From the sequence record NC_014636.1: DNA of 64,000 nt; one strand, 5' to 3'. Position numbers and translations under genes: made by a program. How positions within the stretch are numbered: the first letter of the stretch is position 1; each line of letters opens with the position of its first letter. The notes beneath the pieces were generated by a model that saw only the letters and a program-made list of their open reading frames with translations, ran no database searches and was not told where the DNA came from. Positions 41,302 through 61,180 of the stretch are shown here, piece after piece.

Positions 41302-41424
41302 TTTTGAAGGCTCCCTTCATGATTGATATTTTGGTTTAGTGAGTCTTTCTCACAAAAAGATTGTCTCATACTTTTCAACACAAGACAAGCTTTTTATGAG
41401 GGGTATTTCTACCCCTTCACGTTA

Positions 41425-42096
41425 TTAGAATACCAGAGCGGCACCCAGTACGGCAGAGTTATCATAGCCAACACCGGTGGTAACAGTGTGGCGCATCTTG
41501 ACATACGGCTGAATCATGTGATCGGTAAAGGTCAGAGCGATTTCATGTTCGTTCTCGGTAGCCAGACCCAGGTCAAAATCGGTACGCTCGTGGAAGCCCT
41601 TGCGAGTGTAGTTATAAGCAATGGTCATTTCAGGATGCAGCTCATAACTAACGCCAGCTTTGATCTTGCTGTAATCTTGACCCTCGTTCATGAAGCTGTA
41701 ACCGGCACCAGCATAAGCCAGGAACTTAGCGACCGGCATATATTCGACGATACCTTGTACGTAGGTTTCGTGATCGGTGTTGTCGCCTTCGAAGATGCCG
41801 TATTCTACGCTCGGAACAAAGGTGAAGTCGTCGCTAACTTGCAGACTCTTACCCAGCACACCAGCAGTGTGTTTGTTGGTTTCGTGCTTCACTTCCATGA
41901 AGTAGTTAGCCGGAAGAGCTACGCCCATGCCATACTCGGTAACGTCGGTATTGGTGTTGCGCTCAATGTAAATCTTTTCCAGTTGTACTTGAGCCACGGT
42001 TTCGGTCAGATCGGATGCCTTAGCTTGTTGGCAACCAAAAGCAGAAGCAGCGATAGCCAGACCGACGATTACAGAGTGAATGAAATTCTTAGACAT
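41425..42096 (-). CDS. Outer-membrane beta-barrel protein (KdgM/porin-like)
   Basis: Signal peptide, alternating amphipathic strands, QPYV motif, C-terminal Phe. Confidence 0.7.
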   Translation of the reverse strand: MSKNFIHSVIVGLAIAASAFGCQQAKASDLTETVAQVQLEKIYIERNTNTDVTEYGMGVALPANYFMEVKHETNKHTAGVLGKSLQVSDDFTFVPSVEYGIFEGDNTDHETYVQGIVEYMPVAKFLAYAGAGYSFMNEGQDYSKIKAGVSYELHPEMTIAYNYTRKGFHERTDFDLGLATENEHEIALTFTDHMIQPYVKMRHTVTTGVGYDNSAVLGAALVF

Positions 42097-42110
42097 CAAA
42101 ATGATACCTC

Positions 42111-42329
42111 TTAGTTTGTTGAGAGTAAAGCGATAACCAGCACAAGTAATATGAGTAGGCTTTTGTTATCGCCAAGTTTGTTTAACGTTTCCAGTATACG
42201 ATTCTCTATTGCGAGTGTCAACAACTTTTTCATTATTGCTAACGGTATTACCAGAAACGTTAGTGCTAGAAACTGATATTGATTATACATCAGCCCCAGA
42301 AGATTGCAAACAATATCGTAAAAATCCAT
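42111..42329 (-). CDS. Small membrane protein
   Basis: Two hydrophobic segments. Confidence 0.65.
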   Translation of the reverse strand: MDFYDIVCNLLGLMYNQYQFLALTFLVIPLAIMKKLLTLAIENRILETLNKLGDNKSLLILLVLVIALLSTN

Positions 42330-42377
42330 ATGATTACAATCGTTGACGGTCGGTGTAAAAAATCAAACCAATCGTCC

Positions 42378-42608
42378 TTACAGACGCTCCATATATCGAC
42401 TATACGCGATAGTGTAATCGGAGCCAAAACCAGTAATGTCTTCCCATCCTTGGGCGGGATCTACCAGAATGATAAATCCATACCCCAAGAACGGAATTTC
42501 GTTGTTTGTAGCCACGCCGACAACCGACGCGGTACACTCAATCACATTTCCTTCTTTTTGGGAAACGAGTTCTACCTTGACTCGTTCCCCGCGTTTAAAC
42601 GGGTACAT
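42378..42608 (-). CDS. Hypothetical protein
   Basis: ORF in run. Confidence 0.7.
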   Translation of the reverse strand: MYPFKRGERVKVELVSQKEGNVIECTASVVGVATNNEIPFLGYGFIILVDPAQGWEDITGFGSDYTIAYSRYMERL

Positions 42609-42834
42609 CTATAAGTCCTTGTTTCACAGCTTGATTGAATAGAGGATGTGTATCTGTGATGCTCACATCCCACATACGCAGAATAAGCGAAACATCCTCT
42701 AGTGTCAAGTTTTCTTTTGTGATTTTATACGTTTTCGGGATTCGAAGATGTCCGGATATAAAATCCGGACTATAATATCTGAGATTTCGACTATCGAATC
42801 CAATTTCGTCTTGATGAAGCGCGTCCATACTCAT
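42595..42834 (-). CDS. Hypothetical protein
   Basis: Coupled ORF. Confidence 0.7.
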   Translation of the reverse strand: MSMDALHQDEIGFDSRNLRYYSPDFISGHLRIPKTYKITKENLTLEDVSLILRMWDVSITDTHPLFNQAVKQGLIDVPV

Positions 42835-43784
42835 GACAGCAGCTCCGCGAGATAAACCTCATAGACAAAATCGTCCCAGTATTCACGATTCACAGTTTCG
42901 CGCATACCGTTTTTGCGAGCGATCACAACCTCTTTCTCAACATCGTTCATAAGTTGTTCGAGATAGGGATTAACTTCGTCTACCAGACTACGCTTTCCTA
43001 GCTTAACGTCAAGAATAAATTCACGATGTTTCAGCGGGAATTTCAGATCACCGGTCCGATAGATCTCAAGCAGTTGTTCACCGCCTCGGATAGCATGACT
43101 CAACGCTTTCCAGTCTACACCGACTTCCTCTTTCGCACGTTTAGCGCGATCACCATATTCTTCCCAAATCTTCTGGACTTGCTGGATAAACTCGGTGATC
43201 TTGATTCCATACAGATACTTGCGACCCAGCACCTCATAGAACTCGACAGTTTCACCGGTTCGGGATACTTCGGTACCAGAGAATGTGAATTCATCAGTTG
43301 GCAGACGATCAACAAAATAACGGAGACGATAGTTCATGTCCGACTGAGGAATGTTAGAGATAACGGTCATCACTCGTTCGAGTGCAGCTAGTCGAGTACC
43401 CTTAACACCGTACTTGGTAGCTTGTTTTCGGCAGTAGCCCAAGAATGCATCCATACGAGTCGTGTAAAACATAGACCGATTTTGCTGAATGACTTCCCAA
43501 TAAGGAGAAGTTTCCAGCAGCTGGTTACTGTGCAACATATCGATACACATAGTTTCGCCTTTGCTCGCCAGCTTGATGAACTGACGCAAAGACATCATTT
43601 CGGTATCGATATCATCGGCGCCGTTTTTACCTTTACCACCAGTGCTTTCGTTGTAGACTTCGCGACCACCCAGAATGATCTCCCGCTTAGTGGGAATAAA
43701 GATCCCTTTGTAGTCCCGATCGGAAGTCGGGGTACTCAGCCCGTACAGATGCGAGCCGAATACGGTTTTCATCATTGTTTTCAT
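42831..43784 (-). CDS. Pol-beta-superfamily nucleotidyltransferase (T4 NrdC.11-like)
   Basis: VFGSHLYGLSTPTSDRDYKGIF (GS..DxD), GVDWKALSHAIR. Confidence 0.9.
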   Translation of the reverse strand: MKTMMKTVFGSHLYGLSTPTSDRDYKGIFIPTKREIILGGREVYNESTGGKGKNGADDIDTEMMSLRQFIKLASKGETMCIDMLHSNQLLETSPYWEVIQQNRSMFYTTRMDAFLGYCRKQATKYGVKGTRLAALERVMTVISNIPQSDMNYRLRYFVDRLPTDEFTFSGTEVSRTGETVEFYEVLGRKYLYGIKITEFIQQVQKIWEEYGDRAKRAKEEVGVDWKALSHAIRGGEQLLEIYRTGDLKFPLKHREFILDVKLGKRSLVDEVNPYLEQLMNDVEKEVVIARKNGMRETVNREYWDDFVYEVYLAELLS

Positions 43785-44131
43785 TAGTCACCTTTTCTCA
43801 TAAAGTTAACAGGACTTGGAATAACGCTAGAGTGAATCCTAAAGCAATCCATTACCTGTGTTCTTTCTTCGCCTAGCTGTTTCAGAAAATATTCAGTATC
43901 ATATGCATTCATAGGACGGGTGATTCGGTTTCCATCTGTAATCACATACTTTCGTTTGTCGATCTTGATAGACAGGCCAAATTCTGCCAAATTAGCATTG
44001 ATATAAACCAGACTTTTTGCCATTGAGTCACGCGCCAACGCATGTTTAGTAACATTGCAGATCAACGCAACCGTGCCAGCGACGACCATTATACCAACCG
44101 ATAACTCAAACGGATCAACTGTGATAATCAT
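43784..44131 (-). CDS. Membrane-anchored hypothetical protein
   Basis: N-terminal TM. Confidence 0.7.
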   Translation of the reverse strand: MIITVDPFELSVGIMVVAGTVALICNVTKHALARDSMAKSLVYINANLAEFGLSIKIDKRKYVITDGNRITRPMNAYDTEYFLKQLGEERTQVMDCFRIHSSVIPSPVNFMRKGD

Positions 44132-44601
44132 TGCATAGCCTTTTGCTTGTAGAGTTCAGCCAGATTGGTGTTCAGACGTTCGATTGCTTGTTCCAGAGTT
44201 TCGGCATTAGGATCATAGTTGTCGGCAGTCGAGTCATAATGCGAGGTACTCTTACCGTTTGATATGTCCCAGTGAGTTGAAGTAGTTGTCGGACAACGAG
44301 TCACATACAGATTTTGTTCGGTTTTAGACCGAAGATGAAACACCTTACAGCCATCAAGGCCAGGCACCATCTGATACCCATTGGTTGTTTCTTGTGTGAT
44401 AGTATCACATCCAGTCAGCAACAGAGCAATTGCTAGAATTCCAAACTTTTTCATATTTGCATCCACATTAAAATTGGGTAAATCGCCTTTAAGACCATGA
44501 TCATGAAGTCGTTGCTCCCGATCATGGCCCATATTACGATGTTCAGAATAATGAGCAAACACCAGATTGCGTTTAGTCCTTTCTCCACCATTTGTCATCA
44601 C
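44128..44601 (-). CDS. Putative lipoprotein
   Basis: MKKFGILAIALLLTGC lipobox (likely start 44454); GLDGCKVF..L...VTRCP. Confidence 0.75.
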   Translation of the reverse strand: MMTNGGERTKRNLVFAHYSEHRNMGHDREQRLHDHGLKGDLPNFNVDANMKKFGILAIALLLTGCDTITQETTNGYQMVPGLDGCKVFHLRSKTEQNLYVTRCPTTTSTHWDISNGKSTSHYDSTADNYDPNAETLEQAIERLNTNLAELYKQKAMQ

Positions 44602-44803
44602 TCCTCATATCATTTGAATCTGAGAGAGATTTTATCACAACTGGTCTAGGAACTACAAGTGGTTTGTCCATTATTTTTGTGACATTTGTCACATATACCG
44701 GAATATATTTTTCATCAAAGCGTTGTCCGTCTATCAACTTCTGGAAATTTTGCAGGACTATTTCTTTCGAAGCCCCGCTAATGTCCTGATAGTTATTTGA
44801 CAT
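44573..44803 (-). CDS. Hypothetical protein
   Basis: Start moved to MSNNYQ. Confidence 0.6.
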   Translation of the reverse strand: MSNNYQDISGASKEIVLQNFQKLIDGQRFDEKYIPVYVTNVTKIMDKPLVVPRPVVIKSLSDSNDMRSDDKWWRKD

Positions 44804-45167
44804 TAAAACGCCTGTAGATGTAACGTTGCGCAAATAGATATTTGCGAATGTTATTTGTTCCCTGAACTTGCATCATGAGATCATAGAATTCATGAATGGT
44901 AAGATTGCGAGTTTGCGCACCCTCAACGTTATCAATGAATCGAAACCAAGACGCGGCACCCGCGAAATCGGTAATAATTCCATTGTTATACATTTCGAGC
45001 CGAATGCCTTTCTCTTGCAGAACTTCGCGAACTTCGCGATAGTGCTCCAATACCCAGTTAACTCGACGTTTACGCTTCTTGGTACGATATTGATCGATGC
45101 CGATAAACAAACCAACCACTACCGCGATACAAGACAAGATACTAAGGGAGATAATGAACAGTGCCAT
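44793..45167 (-). CDS. Single-TM membrane protein
   Basis: N-terminal TM then basic cluster; paralogue-like to 43784 and 45169 genes. Confidence 0.75.
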   Translation of the reverse strand: MALFIISLSILSCIAVVVGLFIGIDQYRTKKRKRRVNWVLEHYREVREVLQEKGIRLEMYNNGIITDFAGAASWFRFIDNVEGAQTRNLTIHEFYDLMMQVQGTNNIRKYLFAQRYIYRRFNVK

Positions 45168-45168
45168 T

Positions 45169-45519
45169 TTATTCCTCTATTGGTGTTGAGTGTTGTTCGA
45201 AGTTCGCGCCCTTATCACACGCTTTCCAAAAGCTATAAACTTCGGAAGCAAGTAACGGGCGACTCGTTCGAGTGCTAGACTTGAAAACAAACTGAACGAC
45301 ATTTACCCGTTCTAGTTGTATACCAGTTCTAGTGATTACCATGTTAATCGAATGCATATCTCGGCTTACGCGAATAAACTTTGGCAGTTCTTCGATTATC
45401 ATGATTGCGATCATCGCCATCAATATCCCACAGGCAGAGATGGCGATTACATCAAAAACATTTAAGTTAGATCCCATAACACTCCTTGAAAATCTCGACG
45501 TTAGCGTTAACAAAGGCAA
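45169..45519 (-). CDS. Single-TM membrane protein
   Basis: TM segment; start approximate. Confidence 0.65.
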   Translation of the reverse strand: MPLLTLTSRFSRSVMGSNLNVFDVIAISACGILMAMIAIMIIEELPKFIRVSRDMHSINMVITRTGIQLERVNVVQFVFKSSTRTSRPLLASEVYSFWKACDKGANFEQHSTPIEE

Positions 45520-45829
45520 TCACTTTATCACATGCCAGTTCCAAGGATTTCTGCTTGCGAAGAACTGGGAATTTCACACCGGATTTCCACTTGCAGTCAC
45601 CACACAGCGCGGTAAATTTGTCGTCACCGTCGTGAAGCATGAAATGCGCCCAACGAGCGTTGAAGTATTCAACATCAGAACAACCTTGCTTTGCACCGAC
45701 CATGATGATCTCTACGGTATATTCACCGACAGATTTCAGACTGCGAACACGGACATATTCTGCAACTCGGGAGTCGATACGCGGCTTGATGTATTCTACC
45801 AGAGCTTGCATCTTTTCTTGATTAGTCAT
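45467..45829 (-). CDS. Hypothetical protein
   Basis: Start moved to MTNQEK (GAGGAG SD). Confidence 0.75.
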   Translation of the reverse strand: MTNQEKMQALVEYIKPRIDSRVAEYVRVRSLKSVGEYTVEIIMVGAKQGCSDVEYFNARWAHFMLHDGDDKFTALCGDCKWKSGVKFPVLRKQKSLELACDKVIAFVNANVEIFKECYGI

Positions 45830-45839
45830 GACTATCTCC

Positions 45840-46067
45840 TCATGCAGCTTTCTTCGGGTTGTTGTAAACGTAGACTTTACGACGCTGAACTTTGCCAGCG
45901 AACTGTGCTTCCAGCTTCGCGGAAACTTGCTCACGCACCATGTCAACGGTCTTGTCAATCCAGCGACCGATAGTACGCGGAGAAACATTCAGTTCACGGG
46001 CGACTTGAGCTTTGGTCTTTTTAGAAGCAGTTACAGCGAAGTAGGCTTTGATTTCGACGTTGTTCAT
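45840..46067 (-). CDS. Helix-turn-helix DNA-binding protein
   Basis: TKAQVARELNVSPRTIGRWI; start moved to MNNVEI. Confidence 0.85.
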   Translation of the reverse strand: MNNVEIKAYFAVTASKKTKAQVARELNVSPRTIGRWIDKTVDMVREQVSAKLEAQFAGKVQRRKVYVYNNPKKAA

Positions 46068-46114
46068 GATGTATTCCTCAGTTTCGTTAGAAGTTGTTTT
46101 GTTTCGATGTGGAC

Positions 46115-46143
46115 ATATTATCATGTCCACACATTGAGTCAAG
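46115..46143 (-). promoter_or_regulatory. Early promoter with 9-bp inverted repeat
   Basis: CTTGAC-N17-TAATAT; TGTGGACAT/ATGTCCACA arms. Confidence 0.8.
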
Positions 46144-46145
46144 CA

Positions 46146-46436
46146 TTATTTTTGAGATTTTTTGATTTCGTTCCAAACTTCTTTTTGCAGACGATCACGA
46201 CAACCATTGCGATTCATCAGATAGTCATTGGTCAACTTTTGTTGAGCGTTGAACCAGTGAATCACGGCTTCATGCAAAACGGCACGCTGTTCTTCTGAAC
46301 TCAGGGCAACGAAACGCTCTTTGCCGAAGTATTCAATGCGACTCAGAACACCGTCAGTCATACGCTTGACAGCTTCGGCGTTTACGTTGAATTGTTTTGC
46401 GAGTTCGTCAAACTTAGCTTGGATTTCCATGTTCAT
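46146..46436 (-). CDS. Hypothetical early protein
   Basis: Start moved to MNMEIQ. Confidence 0.75.
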   Translation of the reverse strand: MNMEIQAKFDELAKQFNVNAEAVKRMTDGVLSRIEYFGKERFVALSSEEQRAVLHEAVIHWFNAQQKLTNDYLMNRNGCRDRLQKEVWNEIKKSQK

Positions 46437-46468
46437 GATGTAGTTCTCTTGTTTGTTTCGATGTGGAC

Positions 46469-46521
46469 ATCTTATCAGGTTGAAATGCGTTGTCAACAAA
46501 AAAGGCACCCGAAGGTGCCTT
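46469..46521 (-). promoter_or_regulatory. Terminator-promoter cassette
   Basis: AAGGCACC-TTCG-GGTGCCTT (46502-46521), T-run, then GTTGAC-N17-TAAGAT. Confidence 0.85.
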
Positions 46522-46524
46522 TTA

Positions 46525-49500
46525 TTACTTACAAGCGATGGACAAGAATTTCTCCAAGTCTTTACCCTTGATTTTCTTACACATAGAATACCGATTGTAC
46601 TCGGTACGAGTAGCCGGCACGTAAACGGTAACGTGTGAATCGTCGCCGTATTCAAGCTCAACGCCAGTTGCTGGATTGAACTCTTTTGGATCAACATACT
46701 CAATCACACCGTTTTTACGCATCGGGATCATACCGTCATAGAAAGTATAAATCGCGTAGTCTTTGACGCTTGCGCGTTTTGCTTCTGTCAGCATTTCTCC
46801 AAACTTCATCCGGTTACTTTCAACCAGACTACCTTTCATTTTTGATTGATGCTCTTTGTACTTGCTGAACGTGTTAAGCTCAACCTCATAGCATTTCAGC
46901 ACCTTGATTTGTTTCTTAGGATCGAACACCGCCCATTCCGGAGATCTAACGCCGTGATGATCAGTTGGGTTCGGAACACCAGCAGAACGATAGTCCTTAC
47001 GACGCTCGCCAAGAATAGATTCCATTTCGAATACATAGCCACGTGTGCCAGAATGACGGCCATAACCTTCGTTACTCACGTATTGTAGGATCTTGTCAAT
47101 CTTGTTACTGAAATACAATCCATCACCAAGCATACGACCAACAACAGATTTATCCTTACTTGGAATAATCTTGAATCCATAGCGAAGAACCATGTTAGCA
47201 GCAATACCGCCTGTTCCGTGGAAACATGGCACAATTTGCTCCAGTTTTCCTTCCGCTTCTTGTTGCTTCAAGAACTCGTTATACTCTGGATAAGTCATAT
47301 TAACAGTAAATGATTTATGAATCAACGGATAAGTGTTACCGTGTTTACCAGCGTAATAATTATCAACCAGATGCTTGCCAATCAAATATTTCTGTTCATC
47401 GGTGATGTTATCATCGACAACAGCAGGAGGAGGAACAACAACGTTTGTATCCGCAGCGGCTTCAACGCGAGCGATATAATCACTGAACGTTTCGCCTTTC
47501 TTGGCGCGTATTTTTGCCGATTTAACCAGTTCATCTGGATCAATCTCGTTAAACTCAAACATCTTTTTAACGCGAGCCATATTTGGCGTATCAAACATGT
47601 TGATTGGACCGCCGTGAACTTGCTTGTAAATGAAGTTAATACCAGTCAAAGTAGTCCGAACTTTACCCTTGTAATAGTCGTCCATGTTTTCATAGAAAGC
47701 ATTGGCAACCGCTGGATTAGCTTTCATACCGTTAAACATGATATCAACCAATGTTTGCTGTGCTTTCGCTTTATCATCACGACGACGAATGCCCATCAGA
47801 TTTTCTTTGTTCATGAACTTAAAGCCGTGTGCAACTTCAAGACGCATAAACTCAGCCGCGGATTCATCGTCAAAATCAATCTTGTTGACGAAATCATAAG
47901 CGAAATCACCAATATAACTGGATTCCATATCATTGCCCAACTTAGCATAAGACATCAGCAACAGCGGAACTCTAACGTGTGGATCGCATTGTCCAGAACG
48001 ACTAACAAATCGTCTCAGTCCGTCTTTAGTCTTGATGTTAGTCAGCAAATAAGAAATGCGATTCTTCAATTCATTTCCGGTTGCGGATTCAAGATAAGCT
48101 GGCATAAGCTGCATTGCCTGATAAACTTCGGCAGGATTATCGATCTTCTGAATAATCATGTCTCGAACTTCATTTGCAACTTCCGGGAACTTTTCCATTG
48201 AACGTTTCAGAGCTTCAATCGGCAAATTATCACCAACCAACTTAGCATAGCGAATCATTGCTTTAGCAAGGGTAGCAATCGCAATAGAAGGCAGAATACG
48301 CAATGGAGTATAAACCATCTGCGCCGGACTAGAATTCATAACTTGTTTAACTTCGTAAACGAATTCTTTATCCTCAAGATAATTCTTCTTGGTCCAATAT
48401 TCTTCGATGAAACTGAAATTGGCGTTGGTGATATAATCACGTGCCATATAACGGATCATATTCATATATTGATGAACCGGCTTTGTTCCAGCTCCCCATG
48501 TCGGTAGACTAGGGATCGTCGGATAAATGCTCGCACATTCTTTATTGAAGATATTCACCATAGTAGTAATGGCTTTTGTTCCAATAAACACGTCCGATTC
48601 GGAGCCAAACAGAGGATTTAACTTCATATCCACACCTTGCTGAGACATCAGAGAAGTTGTGGCGGAAATAAAAGTAACTTCCAATCCGTCTACCATTGCA
48701 ATTCGGCGCTCGTCTGGTGCGTTGTCCAGTCTAATCGCTAGTGTGATAACCATGTCAGTTGTCATGCCAAAAGACAACGCTTCCATTTTGCTACCAAGTG
48801 CCGATCCGAACAACTCATACATGATATCATCGGCACTAAAGCCAAACAACCAGGATTTGTTATCTACTTTGCTACCAGCGATAGCATATAGGACGGTATA
48901 TAGTTCAATTGCGCCAGTAAACGGATTATTCTCTCCGTATACGCCATAACGCTTATACAGATTAATGAAATCGGAACGATTCTTAATGAAGAATGTGTCC
49001 TCGTTCATCTTGTAATTGGTTACATCGAAACTGATATTGTCAATTGAACTTGAATGCAACTTAAATTGACGACCGTATCCAGCTAGTTTTGTGATAACGT
49101 CGGTGAAGCGTTCGCGATATCGGATAAACATTTCTTCCTGTACTGGGTCTACCAATTCGAATTCGAATCCGGTTGGCCAGAAGTCGGAGCCGGAAGTGTA
49201 TGTGTTCGGGTCAAGTGTATTCATTCCAGAAATACCGGATTTATTCTCCGCAATATGCTGACCAACGATAGACAATACAGCATCAGCAAAACCACCTTCG
49301 TGATCATAAGTCAGATAACCGGGCTTGACAGGTTCAGCAACGGGCTCTGGCGCAACAGGAGCATCACCAACAACGTCGATAACAGCGTTGGTATCATCAC
49401 CAGTTGTAGTTTGTGGAATCGCGGTATCGTTATCCTGTGAGTCACCAGCACCAGTACCGGTAGTAACAGTGTCCATATTCTTGAATCGAATGCGGCGACT

Positions 49501-50076
49501 GACATCCCAATAATCTGTAGAGATCTCGGTATGTTTGTTGCGTTGACGGCGCATTTCCTTTGACGCATCAATCATGGAAATTGCACTGTTTTTGAATTTT
49601 AGTAGAACGTCACGCAGTTTTGGATCTGCTTTCATGATTGCGCTGTTTTTGATGTTCGCAACCCAGGCACGGACAATATCGTCATCAACTGTATTAACCA
49701 CGCCTGATTTACACAGAACAAGGAAACGGGTCATTTCGTTTACCTTGGCAGAGTTGATAAACATATCTTTATCATGCATCAGCTTAACGATCAGTGAAAT
49801 ATTGTGATTTCGGTCATCGATGTTACTGATTCTCAACTGGGCATCAGTCTTGAAATAACGCTGGATGAATTTGATAGTGGTCTGATCGTTGATCTGTCTA
49901 GCAGCATTGAAGCTACCCAGGATACCAAGGAAGTTAAATGCAAATGCATTAATGATAGAAGTTTCATCATTAACGAATGTAACTTTGGTATCTTTGTCGT
50001 ATAAAGTATTTTCAGTCAGAAAACGATTATACGCATGATCGTTTTGACTTTCGAATAATTGTTTAGTTGTTAACAT
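46525..50076 (-). CDS. Large PARP-like (H-Y-E) ADP-ribosyltransferase, probably late-expressed and virion-associated
   Basis: C-terminal CFHGTG ... GRMLGDGLYFS ... SPEWAVFD; start moved to MLTTKQ (GAGG SD); CTAAATA upstream. Confidence 0.85.
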   Translation of the reverse strand: MLTTKQLFESQNDHAYNRFLTENTLYDKDTKVTFVNDETSIINAFAFNFLGILGSFNAARQINDQTTIKFIQRYFKTDAQLRISNIDDRNHNISLIVKLMHDKDMFINSAKVNEMTRFLVLCKSGVVNTVDDDIVRAWVANIKNSAIMKADPKLRDVLLKFKNSAISMIDASKEMRRQRNKHTEISTDYWDVSRRIRFKNMDTVTTGTGAGDSQDNDTAIPQTTTGDDTNAVIDVVGDAPVAPEPVAEPVKPGYLTYDHEGGFADAVLSIVGQHIAENKSGISGMNTLDPNTYTSGSDFWPTGFEFELVDPVQEEMFIRYRERFTDVITKLAGYGRQFKLHSSSIDNISFDVTNYKMNEDTFFIKNRSDFINLYKRYGVYGENNPFTGAIELYTVLYAIAGSKVDNKSWLFGFSADDIMYELFGSALGSKMEALSFGMTTDMVITLAIRLDNAPDERRIAMVDGLEVTFISATTSLMSQQGVDMKLNPLFGSESDVFIGTKAITTMVNIFNKECASIYPTIPSLPTWGAGTKPVHQYMNMIRYMARDYITNANFSFIEEYWTKKNYLEDKEFVYEVKQVMNSSPAQMVYTPLRILPSIAIATLAKAMIRYAKLVGDNLPIEALKRSMEKFPEVANEVRDMIIQKIDNPAEVYQAMQLMPAYLESATGNELKNRISYLLTNIKTKDGLRRFVSRSGQCDPHVRVPLLLMSYAKLGNDMESSYIGDFAYDFVNKIDFDDESAAEFMRLEVAHGFKFMNKENLMGIRRRDDKAKAQQTLVDIMFNGMKANPAVANAFYENMDDYYKGKVRTTLTGINFIYKQVHGGPINMFDTPNMARVKKMFEFNEIDPDELVKSAKIRAKKGETFSDYIARVEAAADTNVVVPPPAVVDDNITDEQKYLIGKHLVDNYYAGKHGNTYPLIHKSFTVNMTYPEYNEFLKQQEAEGKLEQIVPCFHGTGGIAANMVLRYGFKIIPSKDKSVVGRMLGDGLYFSNKIDKILQYVSNEGYGRHSGTRGYVFEMESILGERRKDYRSAGVPNPTDHHGVRSPEWAVFDPKKQIKVLKCYEVELNTFSKYKEHQSKMKGSLVESNRMKFGEMLTEAKRASVKDYAIYTFYDGMIPMRKNGVIEYVDPKEFNPATGVELEYGDDSHVTVYVPATRTEYNRYSMCKKIKGKDLEKFLSIACK

Positions 50077-50107
50077 TTTGTTCCTCATTAGTGAACTGAT
50101 ATACGAT

Positions 50108-50114
50108 TATTTAG
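50108..50114 (-). promoter_or_regulatory. Late promoter (CTAAATA)
   Basis: 32 nt upstream of PARP-like start. Confidence 0.75.
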
Positions 50115-50120
50115 TGGAAC

Positions 50121-50239
50121 ACCGCGAGCGAAGCGAGCTAGAAAGACAAAATAAAATCTCTTATAATACTTTAATGAGAATCTACTTTGTCTTTTCGTTA
50201 GATATCAATGAGTTAGCGCCTACGGCGCTATCTTCGATT
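50121..50239. repeat. 119-bp structured dispersed repeat, copy 2
   Basis: Similar to 10393-10511; terminal hairpin GCGCC-TAC-GGCGC (compensatory change). Confidence 0.9.
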
Positions 50240-51119
50240 CGCTAGATTGTTCATTATTTATACCGAGTACCTGTTCCATGAACTTATCCGATATGCTATT
50301 GATCAGATCTGGTCGCTTGATGTTCTCATGAAGCCAAGGATCAAAATCGCCGCTATGGTGTAACACTGAATAAGCACCAATCATTGAGCCATAGATACTC
50401 GCAACGGTATCGCTATCATAGCCGAGATTCGCTATGTAAAAGATCCCGTTCTGCTTCTTATCAAAGAGCATAAACGTTCTCCAAGCGATGGTGAGCGAAT
50501 CCTTGACATACCCCGTAGGCTTGCAGTCTGCATTATCAAAGAACAAGCCAAACTCATTCTGGAGCTGTTCCTTGCTCGCTCCGTCGATGATTCGATGCAT
50601 GATACGAACATACAGCAGAGAATACTCCACGACGAACTCGATAGGATGCGTAATCTCGGTCAGTTCTCGCACAACACTTTCGATCTCTTCTTTGCTTTTC
50701 CCATACGTCGCAAACGCAACAGGATAGAATCGCATAAGTGCACCATTACCGCAACCTTTGCTCGCGTCTGTGATTGGCTTGTCCCGCATTATAGCGTTGT
50801 ATGTGCTAGTACCAATATCGAAGCATTCACCAGTTGACGAAAACGCACCACGATTGACCCAGCGACGGATATCACGCTTAATTCCAGCGATGTCGAATTT
50901 GCCATCCTGATAATTGTTCATCGTGATTAGTGCGCAAGTCGTATCATCGGTAAAGTAACCGTAATCGTGATCAAAGCTGTTTTTCTCTGCTTTCAGCGTC
51001 TCGATGTCAATTCGGCGAATCTTCTTGCCGGTATTGAACTCGTTGAAGCTACCAACACAATCACCTATGATTGCTGCACTAGATGATTGAATCATCATAA
51101 GATTTAAGATAAAGTTCAT
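50220..51119 (-). CDS. ADP-ribosylglycohydrolase (DraG/ARH family)
   Basis: IIGDCVG, TDDT, CFDIGTST, GNGALMR, TH, DSDTVASIYGSMIGA; start moved to MNFILN (GGAG SD). Confidence 0.93.
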   Translation of the reverse strand: MNFILNLMMIQSSSAAIIGDCVGSFNEFNTGKKIRRIDIETLKAEKNSFDHDYGYFTDDTTCALITMNNYQDGKFDIAGIKRDIRRWVNRGAFSSTGECFDIGTSTYNAIMRDKPITDASKGCGNGALMRFYPVAFATYGKSKEEIESVVRELTEITHPIEFVVEYSLLYVRIMHRIIDGASKEQLQNEFGLFFDNADCKPTGYVKDSLTIAWRTFMLFDKKQNGIFYIANLGYDSDTVASIYGSMIGAYSVLHHSGDFDPWLHENIKRPDLINSISDKFMEQVLGINNEQSSESKIAP

Positions 51120-51133
51120 ATTTCTCCAATAAA

Positions 51134-51156
51134 AAAGCCACTCATTGAGTGGCTTT
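51134..51156 (-). terminator. Terminator
   Basis: AAAGCCACTC-AAT-GAGTGGCTTT + T-run. Confidence 0.8.
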
Positions 51157-51180
51157 AGTTTACTATATATCACTTTTATG

Positions 51181-56471: not shown

Positions 56472-56524
56472 ACTATAGCAGGCTGAAAATCGATGTCAAT
56501 AAAAAAGGCACCCGAAGGTGCCTT
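56472..56524 (-). promoter_or_regulatory. Terminator-promoter cassette
   Basis: AAGGCACC-TTCG-GGTGCCTT (56505-56524), T-run, then ATTGAC-N17-TATAGT. Confidence 0.85.
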
Positions 56525-57032: not shown

Positions 57033-57153
57033 TGGAGGGGAAGGTGGGACTCGAACCCACATACGACAGTTTGATTTCGATTTAGTTGCCGTAAAGATTC
57101 TTGACAGAATCCGCTTTTTCGACTATTGCCTATACCGATTCGGCTACTTCCCC
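57033..57153 (-). ncRNA. tRNA-like RNA 1 (121 nt) with about 50-nt insert replacing the anticodon loop; encoded CCA
   Basis: Acceptor GGGAAG/CTTCCC, D arm GCCGAATCGGTATAGGC, stem ATAGT/ACTGT, T arm GTGGG-TTCGAGT-CCCAC, 3' TCCA. Confidence 0.8.
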
Positions 57154-57170
57154 AAATTTTTAACAACACT

Positions 57171-57290
57171 ATGCTGGCGGTCTGGGATTCGAACCCAGGT
57201 TACAGGCTTAACAGGCGAGTATTTGTTGCGGAATACATTCTTATCAGAATGAATTTTACAGTGTCCTACCACTAGACGAACCGCCAGCAT
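57171..57290 (-). ncRNA. tRNA-like RNA 2 (120 nt), tRNA-Glu-like scaffold with insert replacing the anticodon arm
   Basis: 11-bp terminal stem ATGCTGGCGGT/ACCGCCAGCAT, D arm GTCTAGTGGTAGGAC, T arm CTGGG-TTCGAAT-CCCAG; no encoded CCA. Confidence 0.8.
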
Positions 57291-57300
57291 AATGCTGTTT

Positions 57301-57425
57301 GTTGACGCGATGCTGGATTCGAACCAGCGACGTTTCTCGGTGTGCCCACACTATACCGGATTCGAACCGGTCCCGATACTTCTCTGCGATCAGAGGCGCT
57401 CTCCCACTGAGCTAATCGCGTCAAC
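57301..57425 (-). ncRNA. tRNA-like RNA 3 (125 nt) with two T-arms
   Basis: 11-bp terminal stem GTTGACGCGAT/ATCGCGTCAAC, D arm GCTCAGTGGGAGAGC, CTCTG-ATCG-CAGAG, CCGG-TTCGAAT-CCGG and GCTGG-TTCGAAT-CCAGC. Confidence 0.8.
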
Positions 57426-57444: not shown

Positions 57445-57903
57445 TTACTTAGTTTGTAAACCTTTTTCTTTAAACTTTTTCACAGCAAGCATGAGGCTAC
57501 AAATAGTTGACTGTATTTCGCCACTGTCTTTCAGAATCTTGCCGTTACCTCTGGTAATCAGAGTATAAACGTCTTTGATATCGTTCTGCATGATCGTTTT
57601 GATCATTTCATCACTATATCGAAGTTGCATGGTAAAGTCTATCATTTCTTTACCGGAAATGAGGTCTACCGATAGTGTCACACCATGAACATAATCAGTG
57701 TTAACAACAACACGAACGATGCCATTGCCGTCGATTGAGATCATCGGAACACCAAGCGGACGTTCGTAATTGCGACGACACTCGGAATCTTTCTTTGCGA
57801 GATCGTCGCGACGTTTCGACTCGGCACTGACGCCAGTCAGTTTACCCTCTTCCACAATATCAGCATAGCTTTGCGGAAACAGAAACTTGATTAAAGATTT
57901 CAT
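57445..57903 (-). CDS. Hypothetical early protein
   Basis: Start moved to MKSLIK (GAGG SD). Confidence 0.8.
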   Translation of the reverse strand: MKSLIKFLFPQSYADIVEEGKLTGVSAESKRRDDLAKKDSECRRNYERPLGVPMISIDGNGIVRVVVNTDYVHGVTLSVDLISGKEMIDFTMQLRYSDEMIKTIMQNDIKDVYTLITRGNGKILKDSGEIQSTICSLMLAVKKFKEKGLQTK

Positions 57904-57931
57904 GATAACTTCCTCTCGTTTAGATGTCGCC

Positions 57932-57960
57932 ATTATAGCGACATCGGATTATCTGTCAAG
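57932..57960 (-). promoter_or_regulatory. Early promoter with inverted repeat; likely drives the tRNA-like cluster
   Basis: CTTGAC-N17-TATAAT; GATGTCGC/GCGACATC arms. Confidence 0.8.
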
Positions 57961-58298
57961 TAGAAATACGCGATAACGATAAAAACTTTACAGACAATGT
58001 GCAGCATTTGATCCGCGAACAAGTTGATCTTGTTCTTGCACTTCATGAGATCGATAATCCAGTGGCTAATAAGCTCTGCCAAACTTAGCCAGACGCTCTG
58101 GGTTACGACATATACCACGACTGCATGAGTAGATGCGTGGGCAGTGAGCCAGTAAATCCAATGCACTCCATAGAGTGGAGAGTTGACTGGATGCTTCCCC
58201 CTTGCGACGCTATCCGGTTGTAACGTGTAATCGGCAACAAAGTGGCCAATCATCAGCAGATATAAGATCTCAAACAATTTTGTCCATTTCTCCCACAA
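57933..58298 (-). CDS. DUF3307-family membrane protein
   Basis: GHFVADYTLQ, L.AH...H, SHWIID..K, DQ.LH. Confidence 0.85.
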   Translation of the reverse strand: MWEKWTKLFEILYLLMIGHFVADYTLQPDSVARGKHPVNSPLYGVHWIYWLTAHASTHAVVVYVVTQSVWLSLAELISHWIIDLMKCKNKINLFADQMLHIVCKVFIVIAYFYLTDNPMSL

Positions 58299-59746: not shown

Positions 59747-61180
59747 TTAGTAGTCGATACCGACGTATCGGTCACTCATGATCTTGTCGAGCATGATTTG
59801 CAGCGGGTTGAAGTCCTTCGCACTCAGGATTGTCTCCATGATAGAAGGGCTGAAACCGGACACAAGCGCGGTACCGTTGTCATCCTTAGTCACCGGATTA
59901 TTAGTCGGGCGCGGACACAGGTTCCAGAACACCAGCTTGGGCATTTCGTAACCAGCTTTGCGGTACTTCGCTTTGATCGATTCGAAGTTGGTTTGTTCAC
60001 CAACACCGTAACGACGACGGCTGTAACCACCATCAGCCATGTTAAATTCCATGTCAGACAGAACAACCATCATAGTCGGCATATCAGACTGGGGAACACG
60101 GTTGCGAACAGCGCGATCCAGAATGATATCGAATGCACCAGTGAAGTTGGTAGAACCACCCCACGGAGCACGACTCAGATGCTCGACCATCGCTTTCAGA
60201 TTGTCACCTTTCTGCTTGATGTTGTAGAAGCACGGATTATCATCGAATGTAATAATCTCATTCTGGAACACACCACGGGAACGTTCGCCGATATACAGAC
60301 CCAGAGAGATCGCGATATCCATAGCAGACAGACCAGCAACAGCGGTCGGACAGCTCATGGAGCCAGAAACGTCGACCATTGCGATCACGTTCTCAGTAGA
60401 ACCAGCCATCCAGTCGCGTTGTGCTTTCCATTGTGCGTCAGCAGCAACAGAAGAACCATTACGCAGAGACTTGATCATGTCGTACGGATATACCGCACTA
60501 GCGTTGATCTTGGCATCACCCTTTTTCAGAGATTCCAGATAAGCGACATAACGAGAGTTAGCGTTTTTCAGGAATGCTTTCTGATAACGAGCAGAAGCAA
60601 CAGACGGCAGCTTACCGAAGTCGATGCCATCCCATTGACGAGCACACATCTTTTGTTCAACGGTATTCGACAGACCAACGACCAGTTGACGATACTCTTT
60701 GGCAGTCAGGCTCATTGCCTTAGCCAGAATACCAGCTTCTTTGCCCTTACGAGGTGCCCACTTTGCAGCAAGACCATTACCTTTGATCGCGATAGCGTCA
60801 ACCATGATCGCAACAGCAGCCTCGCCAATCGGAGAGTCAATCATTGCTACCACGTCTTTGAAGCGACCGATTTCCGGAGTGTTCATCAAAACAACGGTCG
60901 CGTCAACTTCGTGGCGATTAGCCAGGAATTTCAGCAGACGGATGAATTGCTCACGCTCACCAGCGCCACCGCGAATATCGCGAGCCCATTGCAGAATGCG
61001 CACAGCCCAATCCGGAGATTCGGTATAAGCTTCCTGGAACATGCTAGTCAGATCTTTCCCGCGAGAGGAACCAATCTGAGAAAACAGATTCAGACACTTA
61101 TCACCGGTGGTGTAGTTAGTAACAGCACCGTTAGCAGTGCGGGCTTGAGCTTGCACCATTGCGTTCATAAAAGCAGACAT
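59747..61180 (-). CDS. DUF2828-type TROVE-like + vWA protein (Ro60/Rsr-like architecture)
   Basis: TANGA, WARDIRGGAGER, AAKWAPR, LPSVA..RY..AF, INAS.VYPYD, MIDAS DVSGSM, PWGGSTNF, LSDMEF, VFWNL, VSGFSP. Confidence 0.88.
   Translation of the reverse strand: MSAFMNAMVQAQARTANGAVTNYTTGDKCLNLFSQIGSSRGKDLTSMFQEAYTESPDWAVRILQWARDIRGGAGEREQFIRLLKFLANRHEVDATVVLMNTPEIGRFKDVVAMIDSPIGEAAVAIMVDAIAIKGNGLAAKWAPRKGKEAGILAKAMSLTAKEYRQLVVGLSNTVEQKMCARQWDGIDFGKLPSVASARYQKAFLKNANSRYVAYLESLKKGDAKINASAVYPYDMIKSLRNGSSVAADAQWKAQRDWMAGSTENVIAMVDVSGSMSCPTAVAGLSAMDIAISLGLYIGERSRGVFQNEIITFDDNPCFYNIKQKGDNLKAMVEHLSRAPWGGSTNFTGAFDIILDRAVRNRVPQSDMPTMMVVLSDMEFNMADGGYSRRRYGVGEQTNFESIKAKYRKAGYEMPKLVFWNLCPRPTNNPVTKDDNGTALVSGFSPSIMETILSAKDFNPLQIMLDKIMSDRYVGIDY

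What the first reader, a model, noticed from the sequence alone, without database searches (positions are those of the whole stretch)
57033..57290. Two tRNA-scaffold RNAs whose anticodon arm is replaced by a shared structured insert
Seen in sequence: both have proper acceptor, D and T arms, but the anticodon region holds about 50-60 nt with a common motif: A-run, hairpin (G/C)ATTCT-G(TC/AT)A-AGAAT(C/G) with a covarying G-C versus C-G closing pair, then T.T.C(G/C)GCAAC..AAT. The scaffolds differ (RNA1 Gln/Leu-like with encoded CCA; RNA2 Glu-like, 11-bp terminal stem, no CCA), so the insert was kept or acquired in two different tRNA backgrounds. Removing the insert does not restore a canonical 7-nt loop, and it is far too short for a group I intron. 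Inference: tRNA-mimic RNAs displaying a protein-binding module, for example decoys for anticodon nucleases or Y-RNA-like partners of the nearby TROVE/vWA protein. They may be functional analogues of the uncharacterised T4 band C/D RNAs (about 120-140 nt).
Basis: partly seen in the sequence, partly recalled or inferred. Interest (0 to 1): 0.78.

Follow-up and report, generated by a model that had tools for sequence, protein, structure and literature searches.

The report
Ro-partner RNAs shaped like tRNAs
Aeromonas phage phiAS5 has tandem tRNA-shaped RNA genes that carry, where the anticodon arm should be, the same short hairpin-plus-motif that sits beside Ro60-like protein genes in many phages, so they are most likely Y-RNA-type partners of the phage's own Ro-like protein, built in normal tRNA topology instead of the permuted topology known from bacterial YrlA.

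Summary
The window is Aeromonas phage phiAS5. Its minus strand holds three tandem tRNA-like RNAs, not two: RNA1 57033-57153, RNA2 57171-57290 and RNA3 57301-57425. RNA1 and RNA2 share a module made of an A-run, a 6-bp hairpin (..CUG-loop-AG..) and YNGCAA. Covariation supports the acceptor, D and T stems and the hairpin.

The 477-aa gene 2.3 kb upstream (59747-61180, DUF2828+DUF7788) is predicted to fold like Ro60 (TROVE ring plus vWA). The same module, usually in an "open" form whose stem is made by the RNA's 5' and 3' ends, lies next to homologues of this gene in at least 41 of 80 phage contigs. The interior of the open form is often a permuted tRNA-like domain, as in YrlA. Cutting RNA1 and RNA2 in their hairpin loops makes them collinear with those RNAs, including a mycobacteriophage RNA that the Rfam YrlA model hits below its threshold.

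So RNA1 and RNA2 are circular permutants of YrlA-class Y RNAs. The Ro-binding stem is capped and the acceptor end is free, often with an encoded CCA. About 30 further capped copies exist, mostly inside phage tRNA clusters.

Binding and function are inferred, not shown. I found no detectable homology to T4 rnaC/rnaD. Verdict: a new variant of a known kind.

The parts
57033..57153 (-). RNA1 ('type 1'). It is a tRNA-like RNA with a 7-bp acceptor stem, discriminator U, an encoded CCA, a T arm and a degenerate D arm. A 5-bp anticodon-like stem (AUAGU/ACUGU) encloses a ~50-nt insert.
   Evidence: Rfam tRNA 46.3 bits with a 50-nt insertion. Own model R1 92.6 bits. Covariation.
57085..57119 (-). Ro-type module of RNA1: A-run, capped hairpin GAUUCU-GUCA-AGAAUC (57096-57111), spacer, CGGCAA (57086-57091).
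   Evidence: Coordinates verified. The hairpin is 96-100% paired, with changes on both sides at 3-4 of 6 pairs. The same motif lies beside Ro-like genes elsewhere.
57171..57290 (-). RNA2 ('type 2'). It is a tRNA-like RNA with an 11-bp terminal stem, no CCA, a Glu-like D arm and a T arm. The module is inserted directly after the D arm.
   Evidence: Fold. Model R1 108.3 bits (this sequence was in the training set). Homologues in Ci1, Ahp1, L010 and L017.
57225..57257 (-). Ro-type module of RNA2: A-run, capped hairpin CAUUCU-GAUA-AGAAUG (57236-57251), spacer, CCGCAA (57226-57231).
   Evidence: The stem covaries across relatives: CAAACU/AGUUUG in Ci1 and CAUCCU/AGGAUG in Ahp1.
57201..57221 (-). 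Weak side hairpin of RNA2 (UAC-UC-GC / GC-CU-GUA) with the 7-nt anticodon-like loop CUGUUAA. It corresponds to the 'V' stem-loop of YrlA.
   Evidence: MFE fold. The loop is invariant in 5 Aeromonas phages and Ahp1. Analogous loops in other capped RNAs are listed.
57301..57425 (-). RNA3, a third tRNA-like RNA. It has an 11-bp terminal stem, a D arm, a 5-bp hairpin with a tetraloop, and a 3-way junction holding a second T-like hairpin, followed by the true T arm. It has no clear module, and its role is unresolved.
   Evidence: Rfam tRNA 40.4 bits with a 56-nt insertion. Fold. Compensatory changes occur in the terminal stem (A-U to U-A) and in the UCGG/CCGA stem. The ARAGORN 'tRNA-Ala(cgc)' at 57347-57421 uses the inner T-like hairpin.
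59747..61180 (-). Ro60-like protein gene, 477 aa. It has DUF2828 (a TROVE-like helical ring) and DUF7788 (vWA with a DxSxS MIDAS motif). It is the proposed protein partner.
   Evidence: Pfam DUF7788 at 4.8e-50 and DUF2828 at 4.1e-28. AlphaFold2 pLDDT 83.9. The top 11 Foldseek PDB hits are all Ro60/Rsr/TROVE (E 1e-9 to 1e-6, TM 0.42-0.61, whole length). D270, S272 and S274 are invariant.
57932..57959 (-). Consensus sigma-70-like promoter (TTGACA-16-TATAAT) upstream of ORF 57445-57933 and the RNA trio.
   Evidence: 12 of 12 matches. This is a pattern match only.
56505..56524 (-). The first terminator-like hairpin downstream of the trio. This implies the RNAs are cut out of a longer transcript.
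   Evidence: This is a pattern match only.

Best explanation
RNA1 and RNA2 are phage Y RNAs of the YrlA class, written in the native tRNA topology.

In ordinary YrlA-like RNAs the 5' and 3' ends pair to form the Ro-binding stem, and the acceptor stem of the tRNA-like domain is closed by a loop. Here the same stem, with its flanking A-run and YNGCAA motif, is closed by a 4-nt loop. The acceptor stem is open instead, and in RNA1 it carries an encoded CCA.

The most likely mechanism has four steps.
1. The trio is transcribed with the flanking ORFs from the promoter at 57959-57932. Host tRNA-processing enzymes then cut the RNAs out, which the tRNA topology allows.
2. The Ro-like protein encoded 2.3 kb upstream binds the capped stem/YNGCAA module on the outside of its ring.
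3. The tRNA-shaped half, with its elbow and free acceptor end, serves as the effector or recruitment domain. It would bring a tRNA-recognising enzyme or substrate to the Ro-like ring, or gate the ring.
4. The complex acts in RNA quality control or repair, probably of tRNAs, during infection.

What is shown here, computationally, is the anatomy, the covariation, the Ro-like fold, and the co-occurrence and collinearity with YrlA-like RNAs. What is inferred is the processing route, the binding, the effector role and the biological function.
For: **Protein.** The 477-aa neighbour is DUF2828+DUF7788. Its predicted structure matches Ro60/Rsr over the whole length.

**Module beside the gene.**
- A strict descriptor (AG-X5-N3-YNGCA ... 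rcX5-CUG) gives 90 hits on the gene strand of 80 phage loci. The opposite strand gives 10, and shuffles give about 0.1 per strand.
- 41 of 80 loci have a hit within 1.5 kb of the gene.
- Model R2 finds full-length matches in 16 of 80 loci.

**Link to YrlA.**
- Open forms enclose T arm -> closed acceptor -> D arm, for example L014, L021, L022 and L086.
- L086:5527-5611 matches Rfam YrlA at 43.5 bits.
- In mycobacteriophage MsGreen, whose gene is annotated 'Ro-like RNA binding protein', Rfam YrlA (39.3 bits) and R2 (33.3 bits) hit the same RNA just downstream of the gene. That RNA has the stem+CAGCAA module.
- Felix O1 has two such modules in its tRNA cluster next to the gene.
- Permuting RNA1 and RNA2 at the hairpin loop makes them collinear with these RNAs.

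**Capped forms lie by the gene in independent lineages.**
- phiAS5 group, 2.3-2.7 kb.
- Ci1, 0.5 kb, protein 48% identical.
- L010 and L017.
- Ahp1, 2.95 kb.
- APT65, three copies flanking a 45%-identical gene.
- L208 lineage, 6 of 80 loci.

**Minimal hairpin in the leader.** A minimal copy of the module sits directly in front of the ribosome-binding site of the gene in several phages (L012, L013, L014, L015, L018, L084). This is what a binding site of the encoded protein would look like.

**Topology fits tRNA-type maturation.** 24 of 29 further capped RNAs lie inside tRNA gene clusters on the same strand, and 25 of 42 encode CCA.

**Literature.** YrlA RNAs lie within 4 kb of Ro60 genes on the same strand, also in phages, and mimic tRNA (PMC4201824). 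YrlA is described as a circularly permuted tRNA without a free CCA end (bioRxiv 10.1101/312249).
Against: - No binding, expression or processing data exist. Everything rests on sequence comparison.
- The Rfam YrlA model does not recognise RNA1 or RNA2. Its only hit in the window (17.2 bits) spans the T arm of RNA3 and the D arm of RNA2, which is the known dimeric-tRNA artefact.
- The conserved motif is YNGCAA, not the GNCGAA(N)G reported for bacterial YrlA.
- Of 29 capped RNAs found by a pattern scan of IMG/VR, only 1 has the Ro-like gene in the 1-14 kb fetched. The large ORFs next to some of them gave no Ro-like or RNA-related family. Adjacency is therefore not general, and I could not test whether the gene lies elsewhere in those genomes.
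- Several capped RNAs keep a canonical-looking 7-nt anticodon-like loop and a CCA end. That would also fit a tRNA-like activity of their own.
- RNA3 has no clear module, and this account does not explain it.
Confidence: 0.75

Rival explanations
1. They are working tRNAs that carry an extra arm, or an intron that is removed. They would be charged and used in translation, and the module would be incidental or regulatory.
For: - RNA1 has a 7-bp acceptor stem, a discriminator and an encoded CCA.
- 25 of 42 capped relatives encode CCA.
- Many relatives sit in tRNA clusters.
- Several have a 4-5-bp arm with a 7-nt N-U-NNN-A-N loop, such as AUUCCAA, AUGUCAA and CUGUAAA.
- Annotators called the orthologues tRNA-Leu with intron, tRNA-Val or tRNA-OTHER.
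Against: - In phiAS5 neither RNA gives a canonical anticodon arm, with or without the insert. The last 7 nt before RNA1's 3' stem strand are AAAUCAA, with no U33. RNA2's side arm has only 2+3 pairs around two mismatches, an 11-bp terminal stem and no CCA.
- ARAGORN assigns a different anticodon to orthologues of the same RNA, which is a sign of no real anticodon.
- The discriminator varies between U and G among close orthologues.
- At 33-50 nt the insert is far too short for a group I intron, and no ribozyme family matches.
- The same module occurs in RNAs with no tRNA shape at all.
Confidence: 0.08
2. They are decoys or baits for host anticodon nucleases or other tRNA-targeting defences, and they act on their own without the Ro-like protein.
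For: - They have a tRNA shape with an intact elbow.
- The side-arm loops resemble the anticodon loops of tRNAs that known nucleases target. GUN-type examples are CUGUUAA, AUGUCAA and CUGUAAA. UUC-type examples are CUUUCAC and AUUUCAA.
- That colicin E5-type and PrrC-type enzymes recognise such loops is my own knowledge.
Against: - This does not explain why the conserved part is the hairpin/YNGCAA module rather than the anticodon-like loop. RNA1 lacks such a loop, and it varies between lineages.
- It does not explain why that module tracks the Ro-like gene.
- It is not exclusive of the main explanation. A Ro-bound bait is possible.
Confidence: 0.07
3. They are decaying tRNA pseudogenes, or scars of a small mobile insertion, with no function.
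For: PX29, Ci1 and Ahp1 annotate them as pseudo or 'OTHER' tRNAs. The D arm of RNA1 is degenerate in phiAS5.
Against: - They are conserved at 85-89% identity across Aeromonas phages whose flanks are about 76-80% identical.
- Compensatory changes occur in all four helices.
- Strong matches exist in distant viral contigs.
Confidence: 0.03
4. They are homologues or direct functional equivalents of T4 species 1 and 2 RNAs (rnaC, rnaD).
For: They are similar in size (about 120 nt against 119 and 139 nt) and in tandem arrangement. T4 rnaC ends in an acceptor-like stem plus a T arm, and it lies beside tRNA genes.
Against: - Neither model R1 nor R2 hits rnaC or rnaD above noise. The best is 19.9 bits, E 0.2, from the T arm alone.
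- The descriptor finds no module in them.
- None of the roughly 65 tblastn hits that were listed out of about 700 is a T-even phage.
- I did not scan the whole T4 genome for a Ro-like gene.
Confidence: 0.04

Closest known systems
YrlA (Y RNA-like A; Rfam RF02553), the tRNA-mimicking Y RNA of bacteria and some phages that partners Ro60/Rsr
   Same: - It is encoded near a Ro60-family gene on the same strand.
- It has a tRNA-like domain with conserved T and D arms and an acceptor-type stem.
- It has a separate stem plus a short conserved motif thought to bind the protein, and a 'V' side hairpin.
- After circular permutation the order of all elements is the same.
- Phage relatives that carry the same module are partly recognised by the Rfam model.
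   Different: - The topology differs. Here the chain ends are at the acceptor stem, with CCA encoded in RNA1, and the protein-binding stem is capped by a loop. YrlA has a closed acceptor and no free CCA.
- The motif is YNGCAA, not GNCGAA(N)G.
- The partner is a DUF2828-type Ro-like protein, not a Pfam-TROVE Rsr.
- The Rfam model does not score these RNAs.
Deinococcus radiodurans Yrn1 (Y RNA)
   Same: According to PMC4201824, Yrn1 has T-arm-like and partial D-loop features, and a closed 'anticodon-like' arm lies between them. Its orientation relative to the chain ends therefore differs from YrlA, as it does here.
   Different: In Yrn1 the terminal stem itself is the Rsr-binding site and there is no CCA end. 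Here the binding module is internal. I did not test sequence similarity.
[quoted passage not shown]
   Same: [quoted passage not shown] That gives a free acceptor end together with a Ro-binding stem.
   Different: There the state is produced by cutting a closed acceptor loop, which gives two pieces. Here it is encoded as a single chain.
T4 species 1 and 2 RNAs (rnaC, rnaD)
   Same: They are small stable phage RNAs of 119-139 nt, encoded in tandem beside tRNA genes. rnaC has a T arm and an acceptor-like stem.
   Different: They have no module, they do not match either model, and no Ro-like partner is known.
Engineered 'tRNA scaffold' for expressing recombinant RNAs (Ponchon and Dardel; own knowledge)
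   Same: The design principle is the same. A foreign structured RNA replaces the anticodon arm, so that the tRNA body provides folding, processing and stability.
   Different: It is man-made and has no relation by descent.

Membership tests
YrlA / Y RNA (Rfam RF02553) | Encoded within a few kb of a Ro60-family gene, on the same strand | tested here: met
   The RNAs at 57033-57425 and the Ro-like gene at 59747-61180 are both on the minus strand, 2.3 kb apart. The arrangement is the same in Aeh1, PX29, Ah1 and avDM12, and in Ci1, Ahp1 and APT65.
YrlA / Y RNA (Rfam RF02553) | tRNA-like domain with conserved T arm, D arm and acceptor-type stem | tested here: met
   Rfam tRNA aligns these arms in RNA1. 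All three helices covary.
YrlA / Y RNA (Rfam RF02553) | Chain ends form the Ro-binding stem and the acceptor stem is closed by a loop (permuted tRNA, no free CCA) | tested here: not met
   The ends are at the acceptor stem, RNA1 encodes CCA, and the putative binding stem is capped by GUCA or GAUA.
YrlA / Y RNA (Rfam RF02553) | Reaches the Rfam gathering score (69 bits) | tested here: not met
   The only YrlA hit in the region scores 17.2 bits and bridges RNA3 and RNA2. Open-form relatives reach 39-44 bits.
YrlA / Y RNA (Rfam RF02553) | GNCGAA(N)G motif next to the binding stem | tested here: not met
   The conserved motif is YNGCAA, placed 3 nt after the stem strand. The same YNGCAA is present in the mycobacteriophage RNA that the YrlA model hits.
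YrlA / Y RNA (Rfam RF02553) | Physically bound by the Ro60-family protein | not testable with these tools
   This needs immunoprecipitation or in vitro binding.
tRNA (Rfam RF00005) | Cloverleaf with a 5-bp anticodon stem and a 7-nt loop (U33, purine 37) | tested here: not met
   RNA1 has a loop of about 50 nt. RNA2 is not detected by Rfam or ARAGORN. ARAGORN in intron mode gives inconsistent anticodons between orthologues.
Intron-containing tRNA (group I or bulge-helix-bulge) | Removing the insert restores a canonical anticodon arm, and the insert has an intron core | tested here: not met
   No excision restores a 7-nt loop in phiAS5. No ribozyme or intron family matches at E up to 10. The module also occurs outside tRNA-like RNAs.
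Ro60 / TROVE-vWA proteins (for the neighbouring gene) | Helical-repeat ring followed by a vWA domain with a MIDAS motif | tested here: met
   Foldseek gives Ro60/Rsr/TROVE entries as the top 11 hits over about 510-580 aligned columns. DxSxS is invariant. There is a weak VWA_2 hit.
Ro60 / TROVE-vWA proteins (for the neighbouring gene) | Sequence match to Pfam TROVE or to solved Ro60 chains | tested here: not met
   Pfam gives only DUF2828 and DUF7788. phmmer against PDB sequences finds nothing at E up to 1.
T4 rnaC/rnaD | Detectable sequence or structure similarity | tested here: not met
   Models R1 and R2 and the descriptor find nothing beyond the T arm.

The most novel reading that the evidence does not exclude
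The capped RNAs may be more than passive Y RNAs. In this reading they are Ro-tagged tRNA look-alikes with a live acceptor end. They would be processed, given CCA, and perhaps charged or modified like tRNAs. The anticodon-like side loops (GUN and UUC types) would make them baits. They would carry host tRNA-targeting enzymes, such as anticodon nucleases or modification enzymes, or damaged tRNA partners, onto the phage Ro-like ring for sequestration, degradation or repair. This would be a counter-defence RNP assembled on a tRNA scaffold.
Probability: 0.12. Interest if true: 0.85.

Novelty: new variant of a known kind. Interest (0 to 1): 0.62.

Why it matters
Y RNAs and Ro60 are conserved from bacteria to humans, yet nobody knows what the tRNA-like half of bacterial Y RNAs does. 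The published view is that YrlA is a permuted tRNA with a closed acceptor stem and no CCA end. That view argues against any acceptor-end chemistry.

These phage RNAs show that the same module-plus-tRNA design also exists in the un-permuted form. It has a free, often CCA-ended, acceptor stem and is embedded in tRNA operons. Three consequences follow.

1. **A natural test system.** The capped and open forms carry the same module, so the role of the acceptor end can be compared directly.
2. **A compact binding motif.** The consensus is A-run / N5-CUG ... AG-N5-N3-YNGCAA. It offers a candidate site for the large DUF2828 Ro-like family, which tblastn found in about 700 of the 50,697 GenBank phage records searched, including Felix O1, A511 and KVP40-like phages. 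It also yields a candidate autoregulatory leader hairpin.
3. **Better annotation.** It explains a class of 'pseudo', 'OTHER' and 'intron-containing' tRNA calls in phage annotations.

Tried and rejected
- **Rfam on the window.** At gathering and at E up to 10 it gives only tRNA for RNA1 and RNA3. There is a spurious 17-bit YrlA hit across two units, and no ribozyme or intron family.
- **ARAGORN with introns allowed.** It gives different anticodons for orthologues, so it is no use as a decoder.
- **Local secondary pairings inside the insert.** CGC-AAAAA-GCG, GCAA..UUGC and ACGGCA/UGUCGU are not conserved across relatives. I inspected them by eye and dropped them.
- **The tRNA-Ala(cgc) call inside RNA3.** Its 3' acceptor strand is lost by a 1-nt deletion in relatives, while the outer 11-bp stem covaries.
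- **A leader module in phiAS5.** I looked for one upstream of the phiAS5 Ro-like gene and found none.
- **Close relatives of the L010 protein.** Searching their loci for more capped RNAs found none.
- **ORFs beside capped RNAs.** Pfam on large ORFs next to capped RNAs that lack an adjacent Ro-like gene was uninformative.
- **PDB sequence search with the protein.** It gave no hits. Only the fold search worked.
- **Literature.** A search for 'DUF2828' found nothing relevant. Burroughs and Aravind 2016 and Sim et al. 2020 are not held. The supplement of PMC4201824, which lists its 22 phages, is not held. I therefore could not check whether any capped form was already listed.
- **T4 rnaC/rnaD.** They have no module and match neither model.
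Full report
**Where we are.** The window is Aeromonas phage phiAS5 (HM452126), a 225-kb T4-like phage. Window position equals record position minus 124000. All features discussed here lie on the minus strand.

**Checking the observation.** Reading 57460->57000 on the minus strand shows three tandem tRNA-like units, not two.
- RNA1 (57153->57033) is aligned by Rfam's tRNA model end to end at 46.3 bits, with 50 nt inserted in the anticodon loop. It ends CUUCCCC-U-CCA.
- RNA2 (57290->57171) has an 11-bp terminal stem, a Glu-like D arm and a T arm. Neither Rfam nor ARAGORN sees it as a tRNA.
- RNA3 (57425->57301) has an 11-bp terminal stem, a D arm, a 5-bp hairpin with a tetraloop and a junction holding a second T-like hairpin, followed by the real T arm. 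ARAGORN reports its 5' part as tRNA-Ala(cgc), and phiWae14 is annotated that way.
In RNA1 it is AAAAA / GAUUCU-GUCA-AGAAUC / UUUA / CGGCAA. In RNA2 it is AAAA / CAUUCU-GAUA-AGAAUG / UAUU / CCGCAA.
- Each RNA folds better than all 200 shuffles.

**Conservation.** The 400-nt trio is 85-89% identical in avDM12, Ah1, PX29 and Aeh1, while the surrounding DNA is about 76-80% identical. Annotators called the same genes 'tRNA-Leu with intron', 'tRNA-OTHER', 'tRNA-Val (CAC)' or nothing at all. RNA2-like and RNA1-like genes also occur in:
- Citrobacter phage Ci1 (two in tandem);
- Aeromonas phage Ahp1;
- two IMG/VR contigs, L010 and L017.

On a 13-sequence alignment, 95.4% of cells form pairs and 17 of 22 pairs change on both sides. 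The hairpin is 100% paired, with three of its six pairs changing on both sides.

**The neighbouring protein.** ORF 59747-61180 (477 aa) is DUF2828 plus DUF7788, with a weak vWA hit. It has no sequence match in the PDB. An AlphaFold2 model built from 36 homologues (pLDDT 83.9) returns Ro60, Rsr and a TROVE-domain structure as its eleven best Foldseek matches. These cover essentially the whole length (E 1e-9 to 1e-6, TM 0.42-0.61). vWA domains follow further down the list. The MIDAS DxSxS motif is invariant. The family is large:
- at least 7,900 clusters in the protein collection;
- 699 GenBank phage records, including Felix O1, Listeria A511, KVP40-like vibriophages and mycobacteriophages. In the last group it is annotated 'Ro-like RNA binding protein'.

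**The decisive comparison.** I fetched 80 viral contigs that carry a homologue of the protein and searched them with two models. One covers the whole capped RNA (R1). The other covers the contiguous 3' half, that is the stem strand, the motif and the T arm (R2).
- R2 gives full-length matches at E<1e-3 in 16 of the 80 contigs.
- Reading those matches showed that most are not tRNA-topology RNAs. They start AAAG-X5-NNN-YNGCAA and run through a side hairpin, a T arm, an acceptor stem closed by a short loop, a D arm and an A-run. They end rc(X5)-CUG(A). Examples are L014, L021, L022 and L086.
- That is the published topology of YrlA. The Rfam YrlA model matches L086:5527-5611 at 43.5 bits, below its 69-bit threshold.
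- Still shorter versions keep only the stem, the motif and an A-rich loop.

**Statistics and collinearity.**
- A strict descriptor for the module gives 90 hits on the gene strand. The opposite strand gives 10, and shuffles give about 0.1 per strand. 41 of 80 contigs have a hit within 1.5 kb of the gene.
- In mycobacteriophage MsGreen three such modules follow the Ro-like gene. The middle one is hit by both Rfam YrlA (39.3 bits) and R2 (33.3 bits).
- Felix O1 has two modules inside the tRNA cluster that starts right after its gene.
- When phiAS5 RNA1 and RNA2 are cut in the hairpin loop and rejoined at the acceptor ends, they align collinearly with all of these RNAs.
- The hairpin loop of the capped form (CUG-AUA-AG) reads like the 3' end (..CUGAUAA) of an open form joined to its 5' end (AAAG..). 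This is what a permutation by tandem duplication would leave. It is an inference.

**How common is the capped form?**
- Near the gene it is the minority: 3 of 80, 0 of 78 and 6 of 80 loci in three sets.
- A pattern scan of IMG/VR followed by R1 found about 30 more copies at 50-89 bits, against 41 bits or less for ordinary tRNAs.
- In the 42-sequence alignment, 97.3% of cells pair and 19 of 22 pairs change on both sides. No shuffle out of 500 reaches this. The alignment was fitted to the model, so it leans towards the structure.
- 25 of the 42 encode CCA.
- Only one of those 29 loci shows the Ro-like gene in the 1-14 kb fetched, and neighbouring ORFs gave no clue.
- On the other hand, 24 of the 29 lie inside tRNA gene clusters on the same strand, often a few bases from the next tRNA.
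- In the GenBank phage genomes where I found a capped RNA, the gene is close by: 2.3 kb in phiAS5 and a similar distance across its group (2.7 kb in Aeh1), 0.5 kb in Ci1, 2.95 kb in Ahp1, and three copies flanking it in APT65.

**Mechanism.**
- Shown here by computation: the anatomy, the covariation, the Ro-like fold, the co-occurrence, and the collinearity with YrlA-like RNAs.
- Inferred:
  1. The trio is transcribed with its flanking ORFs. There is a perfect sigma-70-like promoter at 57959-57932 and no terminator-like site until 56524-56505. The RNAs would be released by tRNA-processing enzymes, which the native topology permits.
  2. The Ro-like protein binds the stem/YNGCAA module. This follows by analogy with Ro60, which binds a conserved Y-RNA stem mainly through its 5' strand (as summarised in PMC4201824). 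It is also suggested by minimal copies of the module directly in front of the ribosome-binding site of the gene in six other phages, which look like autoregulatory sites.
  3. The tRNA-shaped half is the effector domain.
  4. The complex serves RNA quality control or repair. This is the role proposed for Rsr/YrlA next to RtcB (bioRxiv 10.1101/312249; PMC7824862). A511 has an RtcB-type ligase about 1.3 kb downstream of its gene, and phiAS5 has an RlaP-family nucleotidyltransferase 14 kb away.

**Rivals.**
- *Working tRNAs or intron-bearing tRNAs.* This is unlikely for phiAS5. Neither RNA has a canonical anticodon arm with or without the insert, anticodon calls are inconsistent, and the discriminator varies. 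Some relatives do have neat 7-nt anticodon-like loops and CCA ends, so an acceptor-end activity cannot be excluded.
- *Anticodon-nuclease decoy.* This is untested and is compatible with the main account.
- *Pseudogenes.* Covariation rules this out.
- *Homology with T4 rnaC/rnaD.* I found none. I did not scan the whole T4 genome for a Ro-like gene.

**Comparison with what is known.**
- Phage Y RNAs next to Ro-like genes, and their tRNA mimicry, were reported in 2014 (PMC4201824: 254 bacterial species and 22 phages).
- YrlA is described as a circularly permuted tRNA lacking a free CCA end (10.1101/312249).
- These RNAs meet the contextual and tRNA-domain criteria. They fail the topology, the Rfam score and the published motif.
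- I therefore file them as a new variant, a native-topology or 'capped' YrlA-class RNA, and not as members of RF02553.
- I found no description of this form in the papers I could search. Two key papers and one supplement are not held.

**Verdict.** Novelty: new variant of a known kind. Interest 0.62.

Noticed in passing
window 57301-57425 (-): There is a third tandem tRNA-like RNA (RNA3), with an 11-bp terminal stem and two T-arm-like hairpins. Its inner part is reported as tRNA-Ala(cgc) by ARAGORN and in the phiWae14 record. The outer stem and an internal 4-bp stem covary, whereas the 'Ala' acceptor does not survive in relatives. It has no clear Ro-type module. A sequence CUCU-GAUCGC-AGAG followed at the right spacing by CGGGAC may be a degenerate one.
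   Followed up: partly
L012:5929-5970, L013:2855-2895, L014:5927-5970, L015:1760-1800, L018:5946-5990, L084:1737-1779: Minimal 41-45-nt copies of the module (AAAG-stem-NNN-CAGCAA-loop-stem-CUG) end directly at the ribosome-binding site of the Ro-like gene. They look like autoregulatory leader hairpins. phiAS5 itself has none.
   Followed up: partly
window 57201-57221 (-); A8 alignment rows: The side ('V') hairpin of capped RNAs usually has a 7-nt loop of anticodon-loop form, N-U-NNN-A-N. Examples are CUGUUAA, AUGUCAA, CUGUAAA, CUUUCAC, AUUUCAA and AUUCCAA. GUN and UUC types recur.
   Followed up: partly
L033:9357-9480, 9798-9946; L038:9357-9468, 9748-9868; L054:9259-9404; L055:8267-8382: Other long tRNA-like RNAs lie 2-4 kb downstream of Ro-like genes. 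They have an acceptor stem AGUCCUG.., a class-II-like D arm, a tail ACAAAA and inserts of 40-80 nt. They do not carry the YNGCAA module and may be a separate family.
   Followed up: no
L047:8605-9054 (and L048): A phage contig has a tmRNA match (Rfam RF00023, 75.4 bits) about 2.8 kb downstream of its Ro-like gene, followed by a tRNA cluster.
   Followed up: no
window 42831-43784 (-): A 317-aa ORF matches RlaP, the 'RNA repair pathway DNA polymerase beta family' nucleotidyltransferase (PF10127, 4.7e-13). It lies 14 kb from the RNAs.
   Followed up: no
window 39859-51173 (-): This cluster holds a NAMPT-type nicotinamide phosphoribosyltransferase (39859-41301), a 1187-aa ORF with a weak PARP-catalytic hit (46525-50088) and an ADP-ribosylglycohydrolase (50220-51173). 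Together they suggest an NAD/ADP-ribose module.
   Followed up: no
L170 (Listeria phage A511) 2501-4021 and 5351-6509: The A511 Ro-like gene lies about 1.3 kb upstream of a gene annotated 'tRNA splicing ligase' (RtcB-type). This echoes the bacterial rsr-yrlBA-rtcBA arrangement.
   Followed up: no
window 57933-58298 (-) and 57445-57933 (-): The two ORFs between the promoter region and the RNA trio are a DUF3307 protein and a 162-aa protein with no family match. The 162-aa ORF is conserved directly upstream of the trio in all Aeromonas relatives.
   Followed up: no
L086:5440-5860; L087:7630-8110; L168:3975-4240: Ro-like genes are often flanked by three or four modules in tandem, mixing minimal and tRNA-containing forms. 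In L086 they are preceded by a consensus TTGACT-17-TATAAT promoter.
   Followed up: partly
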